A stretch of DNA of 55,933 nt from Euprymna scolopes (taxonomy: Eukaryota), in the NCBI GenBank assembly GCA_053919585.1, contig JBSSHM010000333.1; one strand, 5' to 3'. The position numbers and the translations under genes are program-made. The notes beneath the pieces are model-generated. The model was not told the origin of the DNA and did not search any database. It was given only the letters and a program-made list of their open reading frames with translations. This document shows, piece after piece, positions 4,682 to 42,579 of this stretch. The stretch's first letter is position 1. The number at the start of each line of letters is the position of its first letter.

Positions 4682-4858
4682 ATGGGAACATTTATTTTTG
4701 TTTTCTTGTTCCTATTATTTATTATTGCTCTCATGAGTATAGGAGTGATTTTTCGTAATAAGCCAATTAAAGGTTCCTGTGGTGGAATACAACAATGCCT
4801 AGACAAAGACACCCCTGCTTCTAAAAAAGAGTCTTGTCCTATTTGCGGAAAGCATTGA
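4682..4858 (+). CDS. nqrM: Na+-NQR maturation factor NqrM (DUF539), 58 aa
   Basis: Manual translation MGTFIFVFLFLLFIIALMSIGVIFRNKPIKGSCGGIQQCLDKDTPASKKESCPICGKH: one TM helix, KPIKGSCGG, Cys-rich tail. Confidence 0.85.
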   Translation: MGTFIFVFLFLLFIIALMSIGVIFRNKPIKGSCGGIQQCLDKDTPASKKESCPICGKH

Positions 4859-4949
4859 TTTTCGCTTATAATTAATTGACTAATAGGTGCTTTTCGTTCC
4901 TTGTGAAATTCTTAATTAAAAACCATCTTAACTTATACATTTATATCTT

Positions 4950-5042
4950 ATGGCAAGTGTTGCAAAAAAAAGACGTAAAAAAATTCGCAAACATAAGCAT
5001 AAAAAATTGCTTAAGCGTACACGTCATAGTCGTCGTAAATAA
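4950..5042 (+). CDS. 30S ribosomal protein bS22 (AURKAIP1/COX24/mS38, DUF1713 family), 30 aa
   Basis: Manual translation MASVAKKRRKKIRKHKHKKLLKRTRHSRRK; fits the bS22 pattern MxSVxKKRRKxxxKxKHxKLLxRTR. Confidence 0.85.
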   Translation: MASVAKKRRKKIRKHKHKKLLKRTRHSRRK

Positions 5043-5152: not shown

Positions 5153-6337
5153 ATGGATATTTCTCAGCAACTAACACTCATTGAGCGTGGTACAGATGAA
5201 ATCATTCCAAATGATGAGCTTATTTCCAAACTAAAAGAAAATCGTCCGCTTCGAATTAAAGCAGGTTTTGATCCAACCTCTCCTGATTTACATCTTGGAC
5301 ATACCGTCTTAATCAATAAGCTTAAGCATTTTCAAGATTTAGGGCATACAATTATTTTCTTGATTGGAGATTTCACCGCTTCTATTGGCGATCCGAGTGG
5401 AAAAAACACCACACGCCCTCCTCTTTGCAAGGAAGAAATTGAGGCAAATACTGAAACCTATGCCAAACAAATCTTTAAAATCCTTGATCCTGAGAAAACC
5501 ATCGTAGAATACAATTCAACATGGTTTGCTAGCAAAGATGCCTCTGCAATGATCAAACTTGCTGCATCATCAACTGTGGCACGCATGCTTGAGCGTGATG
5601 ATTTTGAAAAACGCTATCATTCCAATCAACCCATTGCTATTCATGAATTTCTTTACCCCTTAGTACAAGGCTGGGATTCTGTGGAACTTAAAGCTGATAT
5701 TGAGCTAGGAGGAACGGATCAGAAATTCAATCTTCTTATGGGAAGAGAATTACAAAAACAACAAGGACAATCACCACAAATAATCATTACCATGCCACTG
5801 ATTGAAGGTTTAGACGGCGTAAATAAAATGTCCAAATCCTTAAATAACTATATTGCCATTGATGATTCCCCTAATGAAATGTTTGCAAAAATCATGTCAG
5901 TATCTGATGAATTAATGTGGCGTTATTATGAATTACTCAGCTTTAAAGATGAGAATGTTATTGAGCAACTCAAAAAACAAGCCAGCACAGGCACAAATCC
6001 TCGAGATATTAAAGCACAATTGGGTCGTGAGATTGTCGCAAGATTTTATAATGAAGAAGTAGCAAAACAAGCTGATGAAACTTTTACCAAACAGTTTCGA
6101 GATCAGCAGATACCAGATGATATTCCGCTTTATAACTACTTAGAACCATTGCCTCTTGCCAATGCTTTAAAAGAGAGCAAATTGTGTCAATCTACCAGTG
6201 AAGCTCGCACAATGATTAAACAAGGTGCCGTAAGAATGGATGGAGAAAAAATCCAAAAAATGATGACATTAGAAAGTGGAACAAATGCCACATTTCAAGT
6301 TGGAAAACGTAAATTTGCTCAAATTATTATTCAATAA
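5153..6337 (+). CDS. tyrS: Tyrosine--tRNA ligase
   Basis: [26 protein letters not shown] and a C-terminal S4-like domain. Confidence 0.97.
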
Positions 6338-36561: not shown

Positions 36562-36708
36562 CGTAGAGACGCAATTCATTACGTCTTTAAGATTTATCGC
36601 GTTTTCATTTACCGCCTACGAACGAGAGACCAACAATACAAGAGACGCCATAAATGGACGTCTCTACGTTGGTTGTGATAGAAAATGCCAACAATGAGAC
36701 CTCTCTAC
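36562..36708. repeat. GTAG-type REP doublet (REPIN-like) copy 1, plus a degenerate extra REP
   Basis: Terminal inverted repeats CGTAGAGACG/CGTCTCTACG bound 36562-36668; a decayed unit ATAGAAAATGCCAACAATGAGACCTCTCTAC lies at 36678-36708. Confidence 0.85.
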
Positions 36709-36811
36709 AGAATACATTAATTCTAATGGTGAATGGTACATGGATTTTTTATATGCTATGTGTCGTATCACTTAAGCCTGATTGTCTACGTAGTAAAGGA
36801 ATGTACACAAC

Positions 36812-37033
36812 CTAATCAAACTTAGCATAGAATTGACAAGCCTCCTCTGATTTTAAATGACAAGCTTTAGCATATAATTTAGCCGCCTTCGAATAATTTT
36901 GTTCGACTCCATCACCAAGTTCATAGAGTATTCCCAAATTGGAAAACACCTCTACATTACCACCCTCACAAGATTTTTCTAATTCTTTGATAGAATTGCT
37001 TTCTGCATAAGCCACATAGGAAGATAGTAGCAT
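36812..37033 (-). CDS. Small Sel1-repeat protein (possibly degenerate)
   Basis: LGILYELGDGVEQNYSKAAKLYAKAC is a Sel1 repeat; signal-peptide-like N-terminus. Confidence 0.75.
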   Translation of the reverse strand: MLLSSYVAYAESNSIKELEKSCEGGNVEVFSNLGILYELGDGVEQNYSKAAKLYAKACHLKSEEACQFYAKFD

Positions 37034-37071
37034 TAACCATATAATGATTTTTTTATGTTAAATCACATGAT

Positions 37072-38382
37072 TTATAAATTCGTAGCAAGCATGGTGAAAG
37101 GGGATTCTTGCTTAGGTAAGATAAGTTGAGCATCTACCCCTCCTCCTTTAATCTCTTCAATGGGATGACCTTTATGATCTTGTAGATGATCAATCACATG
37201 AAAATAGTTACCATTCGGTGAAATAATCTCCACCTCATCACCCAAACGCATTTTATTTTTACTTAAAATCTTTGTGATGCCTGTTTGTGCTTCATAATCT
37301 ACCACTTCAGCACACACCCGTTGAATCCGATTACGTGAATGTGAGTCAATATAATTTTGATATTCTTGTGATTGATGACGTTGAAAGAAACCATCGGTAT
37401 ACCCCCTATTGGCAAGGTTTTCCAATGTACCTAATAAATTGGGATCAAATTCCCTACCCGCCACAGCATCATCAATGGCTTGACGATAAGTTTGTGCGGT
37501 GCGTGCTACATAATAACATGATTTGGTTCGCCCTTCAATTTTTACACAATCAATACCCATTTCTACCAATCTTGGAATGTGCTGTATGGCTCGCAAATCT
37601 TTTGAATTCATAATATAGGTACCATGATCATCTTCCTCAATGGGCATGTATTCACCTGGGCGATTGGCTTCCTCTAATAAATAGGGTTGTGAAACATTGA
37701 TTGAGTTAATTGGTTTGGGGGCAGTGATATCTTTAATATTCGTATCCACACCTGCCTCTCCTTGATCTTCATGAACGCTATAATTCCAACGGCAAGAGTT
37801 TGTACATGTCCCCTGATTAGGATCTCGATGATTGAAATAACCTGAAAGCAAACAACGCCCAGAATAAGCAATACACAATGCCCCATGCACAAATACTTCC
37901 AATTCCACATCAGGACACTGCTGACGAATTTCAGCAATCTCATCAAAAGAGAGTTCACGGGATAAAATTACCCGTTGGATACCCACTTGATTCCAAAACT
38001 TTACTGCTGCCCAATTCACCGCATTTGCCTGCACAGAAAGATGTATAGGCATCTCGGGAAAATTCTCTCGCACCAACATAATCAACCCTGCATCTGCCAT
38101 AATCAAGGCATCTGGCTTGAGCTTAATAATCTCACCAATATCATGCAAAAATGTTTTGATTTTCGAATTATGTGGCATCAAATTAATGGTTGCAAAAAAC
38201 TGCTTACCTTGTTGATGAGCCTCAGCAATACCAATGCGTAAATTATCAATACCAAATTCATTATTTCTTGCACGCAAAGAATAGCGAGGCGGTCCGGCAT
38301 ACACCGCATCTGCCCCATAAGCAAAGGCAAAACGCATGTGTTTTAAGCTCCCAGCAGGAAGAAGTAATTCAGGAGATTTCAT
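37072..38382 (-). CDS. trhP: U32-family tRNA hydroxylation protein TrhP (YegQ)
   Basis: PELLLPAG, HGALCIAYSGRCLLS, NQGTCTNSCRW and KIEGRTKS motifs. Confidence 0.93.
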   Translation of the reverse strand: MKSPELLLPAGSLKHMRFAFAYGADAVYAGPPRYSLRARNNEFGIDNLRIGIAEAHQQGKQFFATINLMPHNSKIKTFLHDIGEIIKLKPDALIMADAGLIMLVRENFPEMPIHLSVQANAVNWAAVKFWNQVGIQRVILSRELSFDEIAEIRQQCPDVELEVFVHGALCIAYSGRCLLSGYFNHRDPNQGTCTNSCRWNYSVHEDQGEAGVDTNIKDITAPKPINSINVSQPYLLEEANRPGEYMPIEEDDHGTYIMNSKDLRAIQHIPRLVEMGIDCVKIEGRTKSCYYVARTAQTYRQAIDDAVAGREFDPNLLGTLENLANRGYTDGFFQRHQSQEYQNYIDSHSRNRIQRVCAEVVDYEAQTGITKILSKNKMRLGDEVEIISPNGNYFHVIDHLQDHKGHPIEEIKGGGVDAQLILPKQESPFTMLATNL

Positions 38383-38449
38383 TGATTAAACAAATAGTTG
38401 TAAAATGTAATTAATCTTTTAATTTTAAATCAAATCATGTAGCAACTCA

Positions 38450-39709
38450 ATGAATAGCTCAATCACTCAACTGTGGCAAAATATTGCAGAAAATGCGGCT
38501 AATTCTTCGCAAATTATGCGAACATTATCAACGAAACAAAAAAATCAAACTCTTGTAGCATTAGCAAAAGAAATTGATAAAAAACGTGACTTCATTTTGC
38601 AAGAAAATCAAGTCGATCTCAATAATGGTAAAGCCAAGCAACTCAGTGCTGCTCTCTTAGATAGATTAAGTTTAGATAATGCCAAAATTGATCAAATGAT
38701 TGCTGGTATTCACCAAGTTATTGAGTTGCCTGACCCCGTTGGTGAAATAAGCAAGATGAGTTATCGTCCATCTGGCATTCAAGTAGGAAAAATGCGTTCA
38801 CCACTTGGGGTTATTGCCATCATCTATGAATCACGTCCAAATGTCACCATTGATGCCACTATTTTGTGTTTTAAATCAGGTAATACCTGTATTTTACGTG
38901 GTGGCTCTGAAGCGATACATTCCAACATTGCCATTTATCAATGCATTAAAAATACCTTGAATGATACAAATGTTCCTATACACGCTGTACAACTTTTAGA
39001 ACAAACCGACCGCTCCCTCATTCATATGATGGGGCAATCACCTGAGTATGTGGATGTCATTATTCCACGAGGTGGTGAAGGATTAATCCGTGCAGTATGT
39101 GAAAATAGCAAAGTTCCTGTAATGAAACACCTGCACGGAGTTTGTCACACTTATATAGAAAAAACAGCTGATTCAACCATGGCAGAAAATATTGCTTTTA
39201 ATGCAAAAACCCGTCGCTATGGCGTCTGTAATGCCATGGAAACACTATTAATCGACAAAGAAATTGCCCCAAACCTCCTCCCTTCACTGAGTAAACGCTA
39301 TCACGATAAAAACGTTGAACTACGAGGATGTGAACAAACCTGCAAGATTATTGACATCATCCCTGCCACTGAAGAAGACTGGCAAACTGAATATCTTGAT
39401 GCCATACTCTCCATTAAAATCATGGACAATAGCGATCAAGCAATTGCACACATTAATCATTATGGTTCAGCACACTCTGATGCCATTATTACCAATGATT
39501 TCCAGCAAGCTCAAAAATTCATGAAAGAAGTGGATTCTAGTTCGGTAATGGTGAATACCTCAACCGCCTTTGCTGATGGCTTTGAGTATGGACTTGGTGC
39601 TGAAATTGGTATCAGTACCGATAAGCTACACGCAAGAGGACCAATAGGATTAGAAGGTCTCACCAATGAGAAATACATTGTTATTGGGCAAGGAGAAACT
39701 CGCCCCTAA
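38450..39709 (+). CDS. proA: Gamma-glutamyl phosphate reductase
   Basis: IYESRPNV, IIPRGG, CNAMET and GAEIGISTDKLHARGP motifs. Confidence 0.97.
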   Translation: MNSSITQLWQNIAENAANSSQIMRTLSTKQKNQTLVALAKEIDKKRDFILQENQVDLNNGKAKQLSAALLDRLSLDNAKIDQMIAGIHQVIELPDPVGEISKMSYRPSGIQVGKMRSPLGVIAIIYESRPNVTIDATILCFKSGNTCILRGGSEAIHSNIAIYQCIKNTLNDTNVPIHAVQLLEQTDRSLIHMMGQSPEYVDVIIPRGGEGLIRAVCENSKVPVMKHLHGVCHTYIEKTADSTMAENIAFNAKTRRYGVCNAMETLLIDKEIAPNLLPSLSKRYHDKNVELRGCEQTCKIIDIIPATEEDWQTEYLDAILSIKIMDNSDQAIAHINHYGSAHSDAIITNDFQQAQKFMKEVDSSSVMVNTSTAFADGFEYGLGAEIGISTDKLHARGPIGLEGLTNEKYIVIGQGETRP

Positions 39710-39746
39710 AGATACACCAAACGAAACTGGCACAAAATAAATTGCT

Positions 39747-40343
39747 ATGATTCGAGCTTTTCTCGGAGGAAGTTTTAACCCCATTCATCAAGGACACATC
39801 CAATTAGCACTTGAAAGCATCCAATTGCTCAACCTCAACAGCATCACTCTCATTCCTTGCAAAGACAATCCCTTGAAAAAAATTGATACCACTGTGCAAA
39901 CACACGCTAGAATAGAGGCAATCGAACAAGCAATCCAACAACATGATTTTTTACAAGCAGACTATCGAGAAATACACTCTACTCAGGCACAATCTTTTAC
40001 CATTGATACCTTAAAATCTATTAAACAAGACTCTCTACAAGATACCCTTATATTTGTCATGGGAAGTGATGCATTCTATACTATTCATCTATGGAAAGAC
40101 TGGCAAGATATTCTGCAATACTGCCACTTGCTGATTTTTAATCGCTTAGGCTATCGGCAACCCTCATCCATTCCTTCTCCCTTACAATCATGGTTAGAAA
40201 ATTACGCTGTTTCTACCACCACCTTTATAGACAATCTCTCTCTCTCTAAAAATTCTCATCAACATGGGCAACTGTGTATTACCGATATGAAAGAACCTAT
40301 CAATCTTTCCTCATCACACATTCGCCAAACTGCCAAACCCTAA
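39747..40343 (+). CDS. nadD: Nicotinate-nucleotide adenylyltransferase
   Basis: GGSFNPIHQGH, MGSD and SSSHIR motifs; follows proA. Confidence 0.92.
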   Translation: MIRAFLGGSFNPIHQGHIQLALESIQLLNLNSITLIPCKDNPLKKIDTTVQTHARIEAIEQAIQQHDFLQADYREIHSTQAQSFTIDTLKSIKQDSLQDTLIFVMGSDAFYTIHLWKDWQDILQYCHLLIFNRLGYRQPSSIPSPLQSWLENYAVSTTTFIDNLSLSKNSHQHGQLCITDMKEPINLSSSHIRQTAKP

Positions 40344-40362
40344 CTTAACCTCTAATACAAAA

Positions 40363-40986
40363 ATGATGCAACACGGCGATCTCATCTTTTCTTTTATCGG
40401 TCCACCTGATAATGCCATCTCTGAGGTAACCAATGGATACCATGGTGCTCGCATTAACCATATTGGTATTCTCACCATAAATAATGATAATGGAAAAATT
40501 GACGTCTTAGAAGCAGTTGAACCTGAAGTAAAACTCACCTCTATCCAAGACTTTATGCAAGAATCTCAATTTAATCATCAATCTCCACGCTACATGCTCG
40601 GACGCCTCAAATCCCCCTACCGACATCTCATCCCCTCTGCCATTGAATATGGACTTAAACAACTCTCCGTGCCTTATAACACCCTCTATCTCGCAGATAA
40701 AGAGGCTCTTTATTGCAGTGAACTCATTGTCAATATGTTCCGTTTTGCTAATAACAATCAAGAGTTTTTTAAAACCATCCCAATGAATTTTCGAAATGAA
40801 AATGGACACTTGCTCAACCACTGGATAACACTCTATCAAAAACATAATATGAACGTCCCTGAATACGAAATTGGTTCAAATCCCGGAGAAATTAGCTTAG
40901 ATGAAAAAATTGAAATCTACCGTGTGCAAGGCAATATTCCCGGCTATCGTCCTCCTGCTAATGACCTCACCGACTCCACCTTGTAG
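40363..40986 (+). CDS. YiiX/YebB-like permuted NlpC/P60 cysteine hydrolase
   Basis: GDLIF, NHIGI (His), VLEA, PY and LYCSELI (Cys) in circularly permuted order. Confidence 0.85.
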   Translation: MMQHGDLIFSFIGPPDNAISEVTNGYHGARINHIGILTINNDNGKIDVLEAVEPEVKLTSIQDFMQESQFNHQSPRYMLGRLKSPYRHLIPSAIEYGLKQLSVPYNTLYLADKEALYCSELIVNMFRFANNNQEFFKTIPMNFRNENGHLLNHWITLYQKHNMNVPEYEIGSNPGEISLDEKIEIYRVQGNIPGYRPPANDLTDSTL

Positions 40987-41083
40987 AGACGCGATAAATC
41001 GCATCTCCAAGATTCATTGCGTTTTAATTTATCGCCTACGGAGACGTCCGATAATAAGAGACGCCAACAATGGACGTCTCTAC
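40983..41083. repeat. GTAG-type REP doublet (REPIN-like) copy 2
   Basis: GTAGAGACGCGATAAATCGCATCTC...AGAGACGCCAACAATGGACGTCTCTAC; colinear with copy 1. Confidence 0.88.
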
Positions 41084-41092
41084 TTTATTTGA

Positions 41093-42415
41093 TTAAACCA
41101 CCTTCACCCATGTTTTCATTCCTGATGCTTGGTGACCCAGCATATGGCAGTGGAAAAGCCACTTCCCTGGATTGTTGAAAACGCAAGCGATTTTTTGACT
41201 TTCGCCTGATTCCACTAACGTAGTATCTCGCCAAGGAGAAAGTTCCCCTTGTTTATTGAGTATTTGAAAATGATGACCGTGTAGATGAATGGCATGCGGA
41301 AATCGAGTATCATTAATGAGATCAATCACAGCAGTTTGGTTCTTTTTGAATTGGTGAAAAGGTTTTTTATGTATGCCAGCCACACCATTAAACATCCATG
41401 CCTTGCCATTGTTCACATCTTGCATACTAATCTTACCACTCATCGCTCCTCCCTCCATCACCATATCAAGGTTAGTAGCTTGCGAGATATTGGGAGAAAT
41501 CATTTTATTCGGCTCTAGGATAGGGATCGGTAATTTACTTTTTTTAGCTTTACCTTCAATAGCTAAGCTACCAATTTTTATGTTATTTTCTTCTGAATAC
41601 AGCACGGAAATTTCTTTGTTGCTACTCACATCAGCGATAATATCAACACGCTGAGCAGGTGAAATAATCAGTTTCTTAAGTGGTTCTGTTGTACTTAATG
41701 GCATGCCATCGTAGGCAACGATCTTGCCGCTTATTCCAGTTAACGCAATGGGGAATATTCTATCTGTTGCTACGTTAATCAAACGTAGTCTAATGCGTTG
41801 ATTTTGTTTAATTGGTGCATTATTACCACGAAAAAGTGCTTTGGCAAAATTACCCATCCTGCCACTATGTACTTGATCGTGCAAATTATCAAAATCACCT
41901 TCTTGCTTACCTTGAGCATTCAACCGCCAATCATCAATAAAGACAATGATATCATGATCCACCTTAGGAGGATTTTTTTCTTCCACAATTAATGCACCAT
42001 AAAGCCCACGTGCAACTTGCTCCAATGATCGATCGTGTGAATGATACCAATAAGTACCTGAATCAGGTGCAACAAAGTCATATAAAAATTCACCATTTGG
42101 TTTAACTGGAGCTTGAGTTAAATTGGGGACACCATCCATATTATTAGCTATTCTGATGCCGTGCCAATGTACGGAGGAATTCTGTGTGAGTTTATTTTTA
42201 AAGTTAGTCGTTACTTTTCCTCCTTTTTTTATGCGTATACTAGGCCCGGGTGTAGAGCCATTAAACCCCCAAAAATCAATTGCTGGACTATCTGGCAATA
42301 GCTGGCTTTTTACCGCTTCCGCACGAAGCTCCATGGCTTTGGCTGAAATAAGGGGTAGCTTAGAAAGAATGGGTAAAACAGCAATAGTTTTGATAAATTG
42401 ACGACGAGAAAACAT
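41093..42415 (-). CDS. Tat-exported multicopper oxidase
   Basis: SRRQFI Tat motif; Cu ligands HWHG, WYHSH, HAIHLHGH and HCHMLGHQASGM. Confidence 0.93.
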   Translation of the reverse strand: MFSRRQFIKTIAVLPILSKLPLISAKAMELRAEAVKSQLLPDSPAIDFWGFNGSTPGPSIRIKKGGKVTTNFKNKLTQNSSVHWHGIRIANNMDGVPNLTQAPVKPNGEFLYDFVAPDSGTYWYHSHDRSLEQVARGLYGALIVEEKNPPKVDHDIIVFIDDWRLNAQGKQEGDFDNLHDQVHSGRMGNFAKALFRGNNAPIKQNQRIRLRLINVATDRIFPIALTGISGKIVAYDGMPLSTTEPLKKLIISPAQRVDIIADVSSNKEISVLYSEENNIKIGSLAIEGKAKKSKLPIPILEPNKMISPNISQATNLDMVMEGGAMSGKISMQDVNNGKAWMFNGVAGIHKKPFHQFKKNQTAVIDLINDTRFPHAIHLHGHHFQILNKQGELSPWRDTTLVESGESQKIACVFNNPGKWLFHCHMLGHQASGMKTWVKVV

Positions 42416-42550
42416 AGCACATTTTTTATAGTTTTTAGAATTAGTTATTATTTTAATGGATACAGACGTTATCTTTACCTGCATCTTAAGAAGATTTTTC
42501 TAAGAAACAAGGACTCAATATCTCTTAACACCTTAACATATAGATGATTA

Positions 42551-42579
42551 GTAGAGATACCATAAATAGATACCTATAC
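42551..42579. repeat. Degenerate single REP unit
   Basis: GTAGAGATACCATAAATAGATACCTATAC matches GTAGAGACGCCATAAATGGACGTCTCTAC at 22 of 29 positions. Confidence 0.6.

What the first reader, a model, noticed from the sequence alone, without database searches (positions are those of the whole stretch)
4950..5042. Hidden 30-aa bS22 (COX24/mS38-like) ribosomal protein in a gammaproteobacterium-like genome
Seen: ORF MASVAKKRRKKIRKHKHKKLLKRTRHSRRK, below the ORF-track cutoff, between nqrM and tyrS. Known: bS22 is a tiny basic helix seen in ribosomes of mycobacteria and Bacteroidetes and related to mitochondrial mS38/COX24; E. coli has no member of this family. Inference: this lineage may have a ribosome with an extra protein not usually described for Gammaproteobacteria, and gene callers would miss it.
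Basis: partly seen in the sequence, partly recalled or inferred. Interest (0 to 1): 0.72.

Follow-up and report, generated by a model that had tools for sequence, protein, structure and literature searches.

The report
bS22 ribosomal protein in gammaproteobacterial symbiont
A 30-residue gene on a bacterial contig inside an animal-sized genome assembly is a genuine, selection-maintained copy of the tiny ribosomal protein bS22, which is otherwise almost unknown in Gammaproteobacteria and was probably gained by gene transfer.

Summary
The ORF is at 4950-5042(+) exactly as described. It passes the curated cut-offs of NCBIfam NF047430 (ribo_bS22, 43.9 vs 34 bits) and Pfam PF08213 (35.1 vs 23). It aligns end to end, without gaps, with bS22 chains from solved actinobacterial ribosomes (20/30 identical, Lys16 kept).

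The window is a whole bacterial contig within a 5.9-Gb eukaryote assembly. Its nearest genome is the octocoral symbiont MAG LS06H_Bin4 (Gammaproteobacteria, probably Ca. Microaerophilica antagonistica; TyrS 78% identical). That MAG has the same nqrM-bS22-tyrS order and an identical peptide. All 12 coding nucleotide differences are synonymous, while the flanks have diverged with indels. This indicates strong purifying selection.

Six-frame searches found bS22 in only 1 of the 5 genomes of that MAG's family/order, in 1 of 401 sampled genomes of its class and in 1 of 401 of its phylum. The hit was that MAG each time. E. coli and Caulobacter controls were negative.

- The family already has a curated annotation model.
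- The identical gene was called and Pfam-tagged in public metagenomes.
- It is the actinobacterial/DUF1713 type, not the Bacteroidetes type.

Ribosome binding and expression remain untested. This is a new member of a known kind in an unexpected lineage, most simply explained by horizontal gain. Interest is moderate.

The parts
4950..5042 (+). bS22 gene (30 codons plus TAA): small, highly basic 30S ribosomal protein of the DUF1713/COX24_C type
   Evidence: NF047430 43.9 bits (cut-off 34) and PF08213 35.1 bits (GA 23), both over the full length 1-30. Gapless alignment to solved bS22 chains 8crx_X and 5o5j. Identical peptide in G001 despite 12 synonymous coding differences. AF2 predicts helix 2-23, a break at residue 24 and helix 25-29, pLDDT 88.5.
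4866..4949 (+). Upstream spacer that should hold the gene's promoter and translation start signals. No Shine-Dalgarno-like motif is present and no consensus sigma-70 site was found.
   Evidence: Sequence read. Promoter scan found nothing on the + strand. The spacer is poorly conserved and 160 nt shorter than in G001. SD scan.
4845..4865 (+). Terminator-like hairpin with a T-rich tail at the end of the nqrM-like gene, suggesting that bS22 is not co-transcribed with it
   Evidence: Pattern scan found 2 terminator-like sites against 0.2 expected. This is a consensus match only.
4682..4858 (+). NqrM-like small membrane protein gene (upstream neighbour)
   Evidence: PF04400 25.4 bits, cut-off 22, partial match. 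The orthologue in G001 is 76% identical.
5153..6337 (+). tyrS, tyrosine-tRNA ligase (downstream neighbour, 110 nt after bS22), followed by thiS, thiG, tsaE, an amidase, mutL and miaA
   Evidence: TIGR00234 404.7 bits. The same gene order occurs in the octocoral contigs.

Best explanation
The ORF is a functional gene for ribosomal protein bS22, the bacterial counterpart of the C-terminal DUF1713 domain of mitochondrial mS38/Cox24. It belongs to an uncultured, invertebrate-associated gammaproteobacterium related to the octocoral symbiont Ca. Microaerophilica antagonistica. By analogy with solved actinobacterial ribosomes, the 3.8-kDa basic helix should insert into the 16S rRNA pocket formed by h27/h44/h45 next to the decoding centre. 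There the conserved Lys16 would touch the h44 backbone, and the peptide would reach the 23S rRNA as an extra inter-subunit bridge. Shown here: family membership, purifying selection, shared synteny in two species, and rarity in the class and phylum as sampled. Inferred: ribosome binding, expression, and origin by a single horizontal gain in the common ancestor of the two carrier species, followed by full adaptation to the host's AT-rich codon usage.
For: - Family: NF047430 equivalog 43.9 bits (cut-off 34) and PF08213 35.1 bits (cut-off 23), full length.
- Solved relatives: gapless 1-30 alignment with the C. acnes and mycobacterial bS22 chains. The non-basic positions S3, V4, H17, L20, L21 and T24 are conserved, as is K16, which PMC10081302 reports as the h44 contact.
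- Selection: the peptide is identical in G001, although TyrS is only 78% identical. All 12 coding differences are synonymous. Only 20% of possible single changes are synonymous, so the naive probability is about 4e-9. No other frame is conserved.
- Not a chimera: the same nqrM-bS22-tyrS-thiS-thiG-tsaE order was assembled independently in JGI and ENA octocoral metagenomes.
- Adapted to its genome: ORF GC is 33% against 36.6% for the window, and codon use matches the host genome.
- Rarity: 1/5 in the family/order with two different models, 1/61 relatives, 1/401 class and 1/401 phylum. The other four family members have hisF-hisE-tyrS and no bS22 anywhere. None of the 79 other beta/gamma tyrS neighbourhoods has it.
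- Fold: AF2 predicts a helix-break-helix at pLDDT 88.5.
- Pocket: the G001 16S rRNA is a normal full-length SSU (1552 bits) with the usual decoding-site and 3'-end sequences. This fits the statement in PMC10618245 that the bS22 pocket is structurally conserved.
Against: - No expression or ribosome-association data: no sequencing run could be listed, and the organism is uncultured.
- No recognisable promoter or Shine-Dalgarno motif upstream, although most genes on this contig also lack SD-like motifs.
- Conservation rests on only two independent lineages, because all the octocoral contigs are one species.
- The genome samples cover about 1-2% of the species of the class and phylum, so other carrier clades may exist.
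- The donor is unidentified.
- With 30 residues rich in K and R, part of the HMM score comes from composition.
Confidence: 0.85

Rival explanations
1. The peptide is made but works mainly outside the ribosome, as a free cationic helical peptide. It could be an antimicrobial or bacteriocin-like agent against competitors in the host's microbiome, or a general nucleic-acid binder.
For: PMC10085706 reports that synthetic C. acnes bS22 inhibits growth of E. coli and staphylococci and blocks E. coli cell-free translation at 80 uM. The sister species was named for its predicted antagonistic potential.
Against: There is no signal peptide, and no export, immunity or modification gene next to it. The neighbours are housekeeping genes. 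In every case where a member of this family has been localised, it sits in the 30S pocket. Invariance of all 30 residues fits a tight rRNA interface better than a membrane-active peptide.
Confidence: 0.07
2. The gene is real and ribosomal but was inherited vertically from an old proteobacterial ancestor and lost almost everywhere else, rather than gained by transfer.
For: Its composition and codon use are fully native. No mobile-element gene flanks it. Tiny genes are easily lost or overlooked.
Against: This would need losses in four of five family members, at least two of them apparently single-contig genomes. It would also need losses in all other sampled members of the class and phylum. The peptide is 83-86% identical to copies on high-GC contigs of a quite different gene content, against 67% to Actinobacteria. 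That level is too high for a divergence as old as the phylum, but 30 residues give weak resolution.
Confidence: 0.1
3. A chance open frame in an A-rich intergenic spacer that mimics a lysine/arginine-rich profile.
For: The region is AT-rich and short. K/R-rich models attract compositional matches: sub-threshold hits of 24 bits were seen in two unrelated genomes.
Against: The score is about 10 bits above the curated cut-off, and it is the only hit in 5.9 Gb. The match runs over the full length from Met1, including the non-basic positions. Twelve of 12 substitutions are synonymous, while the adjoining spacers carry indels and are only about 70-76% identical where they can be aligned.
Confidence: 0.01

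Closest known systems
Actinobacterial bS22 (M. smegmatis MSMEG_0945 / M. tuberculosis Rv0550B; C. acnes bS22; PDB 5o5j, 5o61, 8crx)
   Same: Same Pfam/NCBIfam family and the same length class (30 vs 33 aa). Gapless alignment with 20/30 identical residues, including Lys16 and the S-V...K-H..L-L..R-T-R pattern. Highly basic. Predicted helix-break-helix.
   Different: Host is a low-GC gammaproteobacterium rather than an actinobacterium. It lacks the C-terminal L/G-K tail. It has A2, A5, H15, H26 and S27 in place of G, I, K, V/I and Q. Binding to a ribosome has not been shown here.
Mitochondrial mS38 / Cox24 / AURKAIP1 C-terminal domain (PF08213)
   Same: The Pfam domain is shared. The mS38 chains align to residues 3-30.
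   Different: The similarity is weak (E 0.1-3, against 6e-5 for the actinobacterial chains). mS38 proteins are 70-340 aa with long N-terminal parts. A host-to-symbiont origin is therefore not favoured.
Bacteroidetes and Borrelia bS22 (F. johnsoniae Fjoh_1533, B. burgdorferi bb0822)
   Same: Same size, same charge and, according to the papers, the same rRNA pocket.
   Different: There is no detectable sequence match: they are absent from the PDB hits at E<=10. NF047430 and PF08213 do not ring in the Bacteroides thetaiotaomicron control.
Unnamed bS22 copies on high-GC metagenome contigs (P0001-P0008, loci L089-L103)
   Same: These are the closest sequences found: 77-86% identical, sharing the KKRRKK(I/M)RKHKH and RTRH motifs.
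   Different: The contigs have 56-70% GC and carry sigma-54 activators, PomA/MotA-type stators, DciA and DUF1573 proteins. They show no synteny with the window. Their taxon could not be determined.

Membership tests
bS22 (NCBIfam NF047430, equivalog) | Whole-protein score above the curated cut-off of 34 bits | tested here: met
   43.9 bits, E 1.9e-11, residues 1-30 on model positions 1-30 of 31. The six-frame search gave 42.4 bits.
bS22 / COX24_C (Pfam PF08213, formerly DUF1713) | Score above the gathering threshold of 23 bits | tested here: met
   35.1 bits, E 1.2e-8, residues 1-30 on model positions 1-30 of 33.
bS22 | Stand-alone peptide of about 30-33 residues, more than 55% Lys+Arg, pI above 12 | tested here: met
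   30 aa, 17 K/R (57%), computed pI about 12. The papers give 55-65% basic residues and pI 12.7-12.9.
bS22 | Conserved Lys16, which contacts the h44 backbone (PMC10081302) | tested here: met
   K16 aligns with K16 of the mycobacterial and C. acnes chains. It is invariant in alignment A2.
bS22 | Alpha-helical peptide with a bend | tested here: met
   AF2 predicts helix 2-23, a break at residue 24 and helix 25-29, mean pLDDT 88.5. The model was not superposed on solved chains, so the position of the bend was not compared.
bS22 | Physically bound in the 30S pocket between h27, h44 and h45, bridging to 23S rRNA | not testable with these tools
   The organism is uncultured and no reads or proteomics were available.
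bS22 | Gene expressed | not testable with these tools
   No public run could be listed for the locus. Purifying selection is indirect support only.
Bacteroidetes-type bS22 (Fjoh_1533-like) | Sequence similarity to the F. johnsoniae or P. gingivalis chains | tested here: not met
   No such chain appears among the PDB matches at E<=10.

The most novel reading that the evidence does not exclude
A ribosomal protein that the gammaproteobacterial ribosome never had was acquired by horizontal transfer in the ancestor of a small clade of marine-invertebrate symbionts. It became a fixed, invariant ribosome component. This would show that the bS22/eL41/mS38 pocket is a universal 'plug-in' site that can be filled by transfer of a single 93-nt gene. 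The benefit might be a change in decoding-site or aminoglycoside-site geometry in a holobiont rich in antibiotic producers.
Probability: 0.5. Interest if true: 0.6.

Novelty: new member of a known kind. Interest (0 to 1): 0.45.

Why it matters
The structural literature treats bS22 as specific to Actinobacteria, with distant structural counterparts in Bacteroidetes and Borrelia and none in E. coli. A selection-maintained copy in a gammaproteobacterium shows that ribosome composition can differ within this otherwise well-studied class. Its rRNA should be much nearer to E. coli's than an actinobacterium's is, but no such comparison was made here. It is also a likely case of horizontal gain of a ribosomal protein. 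And it makes a question directly testable: does the empty pocket of an E. coli-type ribosome accept bS22, and what does that do to decoding? It is also a reminder that genes of about 30 codons are worth annotating in symbiont MAGs.

Tried and rejected
- The exhaustive representative search gave only 4 hits at E<=0.001. A 30-aa query has little score to spare against 1.8 billion proteins. The library is also clustered at 50% identity, so most bS22s hide behind a few over-long representatives. It therefore cannot be used to size the family or name a donor.
- The contigs carrying the nearest homologues are not in the genome collection. NCBIfam scans of their neighbours gave no lineage-specific family. 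Their taxon stays open.
- The Atlas look-up confirmed COX24_C clusters but records no taxa.
- I tried a Bacteroidota positive control through a locus labelled Flavobacteriaceae (G786). It gave 0 of 81. This is uninformative: the models also miss the Bacteroides control, and the phylum of G786 is not disclosed.
- A second class sample with n=383 listed the same handles as the first, so it adds nothing independent.
- No public sequencing run was listed.
- The Rfam SSU search of the 5.9-Gb assembly failed. Searching it with the G001 16S found only host rDNA repeats at about 75% identity. The symbiont's own 16S is therefore not in the assembly, and the G001 16S was read instead.
- The sub-threshold hit in G381 has no matching ORF, and the one in G436 lies inside a 406-aa open frame. 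Both were dismissed as noise.
- A tyrS leader-peptide or attenuator role was rejected: the peptide has no Tyr codon and belongs to a ribosomal protein family.
- Transfer from the host's nuclear mS38 gene was considered and not favoured.

Full report
**Observation.** The window has an ATG at 4950 and a TAA at 5040-5042. The ORF encodes MASVAKKRRKKIRKHKHKKLLKRTRHSRRK. It sits 91 nt after a small NqrM-like gene (4682-4858; PF04400 25.4 bits) and 110 nt before tyrS (5153-6337; TIGR00234 404.7 bits). Downstream come thiS, thiG, tsaE, an Amidase_3/LysM amidase, mutL and miaA. From my own knowledge, not tested here, the tsaE-amidase-mutL-miaA run is a typical gammaproteobacterial arrangement.

**What the contig is.** The window is the whole of contig C255 of an assembly of 5.9 Gb in 925 contigs. 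It is densely packed with bacterial genes at about 36% GC. It is therefore a bacterial symbiont or contaminant contig in a eukaryote assembly. No bacterial 16S like that of its nearest relative is present in the assembly; only host rDNA repeats matched.

**Nearest relative.** TyrS finds one close relative at 78% identity. The next best are about 62% identical and scattered over beta- and gammaproteobacteria. The close relative is CAKMZV01, MAG LS06H_Bin4.
- According to Keller-Costa et al. 2022 (PMC9502895) and its supplement, it comes from healthy tissue of the octocoral Leptogorgia sarmentosa.
- It is 1.97 Mb, 37.5% GC, 96.5% complete and 0.2% contaminated.
- It was classified as Gammaproteobacteria; PS1; novel Ca. 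Thioglobaceae.
- By GC and size it is one of the four MAGs named Ca. Microaerophilica antagonistica.

**Identity of the ORF.** NCBIfam NF047430 (ribo_bS22, equivalog) scores 43.9 bits against a cut-off of 34. Pfam PF08213 (COX24_C, formerly DUF1713) scores 35.1 against 23. Both cover residues 1-30.
- In a six-frame search of the entire 5.9-Gb assembly it is the only match, at E 6.5e-7.
- Against the PDB, the best matches are bS22 chains from actinobacterial ribosomes, including C. acnes (8crx_X, E 6e-5) and M. smegmatis (e.g. 5o5j). They align 1-30 without gaps.
- I count 20 of 30 identical residues. These include the non-basic S3, V4, H17, L20, L21 and T24, and also Lys16, which PMC10081302 reports as contacting the h44 backbone.
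- Mitochondrial mS38 chains match only weakly (E 0.1-3).
- The F. johnsoniae and Borrelia bS22 chains do not appear at all.
- AlphaFold2 with a small alignment predicts a helix (2-23), a break at residue 24 and a short helix (25-29), at pLDDT 88.5.

So the protein belongs to the actinobacterial/DUF1713 sequence type of bS22.

**Selection.** The sister MAG has the same nqrM-bS22-tyrS order and an identical peptide.
- The two ORFs differ at 13 of 93 nucleotides: 12 in coding codons, all synonymous, and one in the stop codon (TAA/TAG).
- Only 20% of possible single changes in this ORF are synonymous, so 12 of 12 has a naive probability of about 4e-9.
- No other reading frame is preserved.
- TyrS is 78% and NqrM 76% identical at the protein level. 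The flanking spacers carry a 160-nt length difference and are only 70-76% identical where they can be aligned.
- ORF GC (33%) and codon choice match the rest of the contig.

All other public contigs with the exact peptide (8 were read) come from the same octocoral study and are one species. Conservation therefore rests on two lineages.

**Distribution.** The GTDB family and order of the sister MAG are the same five species genomes. Only the MAG has bS22, with either the NCBIfam or the Pfam model.
- The other four have hisF-hisE-tyrS instead, and no hit anywhere in the genome. Two of these had their tyrS hit at about 1.77 Mb on contig 1.
- The MAG was also the only hit above cut-off among 61 relatives, 401 genomes drawn evenly from its class and 401 from its phylum.
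- Two sub-threshold hits (24 bits) are noise.
- Among 80 tyrS neighbourhoods of the best beta/gamma TyrS relatives, only the MAG has the ORF.
- Of 14 named control genomes, only Corynebacterium glutamicum rings. E. coli, Caulobacter, Bacillus, Thermus, Deinococcus, Synechococcus, Thermotoga, Lactococcus and Bacteroides do not.

These are samples, so the correct wording is 'not found in those searched'. A repeat draw gave the same genomes.

**Literature.**
- bS22 was found in mycobacterial ribosomes and is described as conserved throughout Actinobacteria and absent from E. coli (PMC10081302).
- PMC10085706 calls it Actinobacterium-specific and reports a 37%-identical counterpart in F. johnsoniae.
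- Jha et al. described the Bacteroidetes protein (PMC7797042).
- The Borrelia ribosome paper found an unannotated one and predicted more would turn up (PMC10618245).
- A search for bS22 together with Gammaproteobacteria returned only unrelated strain names.

**Origin.** The most parsimonious reading is one gain in the common ancestor of the window organism and the octocoral symbiont, followed by full compositional adaptation.
- The nearest other sequences are 77-86% identical. They share KKRRKK(I/M)RKHKH and RTRH.
- They lie on 56-70% GC metagenome contigs with sigma-54 activators, PomA/MotA stators, DciA and DUF1573 proteins.
- I could not name their taxon.
- Because the representative library is clustered at 50% identity, they cannot be taken as the donor.
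- Vertical inheritance with massive loss is not excluded, but it needs many losses.

**Mechanism (inferred).** By homology, the peptide should occupy the h27/h44/h45 pocket by the decoding centre and bridge to the 23S rRNA, as in the solved structures. The sister MAG's 16S rRNA is a full-length ordinary SSU. Its decoding-site stretch and 3' end read as expected, including the CCTCC anti-SD. Expression and binding could not be tested, because no run was listed. The gene has no SD-like motif and no consensus promoter, but only about 6 of 44 starts on this contig have an SD-like motif.

The gene is not invisible to pipelines. It was called and Pfam-tagged in JGI/ENA/NCBI records, and NCBI has an equivalog model for it. 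The 'Bacteroidetes' comparison is structural only.

**Verdict.** This is a real bS22 gene and a new member of a known family. It sits in a lineage where the family is otherwise not found in about 860 genome searches (the three samples overlap in part). It was probably gained by transfer. Interest is moderate.

Noticed in passing
window 1-55933 (all predicted starts): Only about 6 of 44 predicted gene starts have an SD-like motif (AGGAG/GGAG/GAGG) within 22 nt upstream. The sister species' 16S rRNA nevertheless keeps the canonical CCTCC 3' end (L104 3030-3043). This looks like an SD-poor gammaproteobacterium. The start codons were not curated, so the fraction is rough.
   Followed up: partly
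whole contig (G000:C255): The window is an entire 55.9-kb bacterial contig inside a 5.9-Gb, 925-contig eukaryote assembly. No matching bacterial 16S is in the assembly, so only part of the symbiont or contaminant genome seems to be present.
   Followed up: partly
L002 323-574 versus window 4859-4949: The nqrM-bS22 spacer is 251 nt in the octocoral MAG but 91 nt here. The extra 160 nt in the MAG has no counterpart in the window.
   Followed up: no
L087 (G006:C22:12294-13458): In one of the four bS22-less family members, tyrS matches in two overlapping pieces, with 2 TGA and 1 TAA inside the first. It is a possible frameshift, pseudogene or assembly error.
   Followed up: no
window 36562-42579: A first-reader note on this window reports a GTAG-type REP/REPIN repeat family at accessory-gene junctions. 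I did not examine it.
   Followed up: no
L089, L091, L101 (P0001, P0003, P0004, P0007): Several metagenome gene calls for bS22 homologues are over-extended at the N-terminus (47-61 aa). The true 30-33-aa protein starts at an internal Met/Leu-Gly-Ser-Val, so a TTG/CTG-type or mis-set start is likely. These long forms are the ones that stand as cluster representatives.
   Followed up: no
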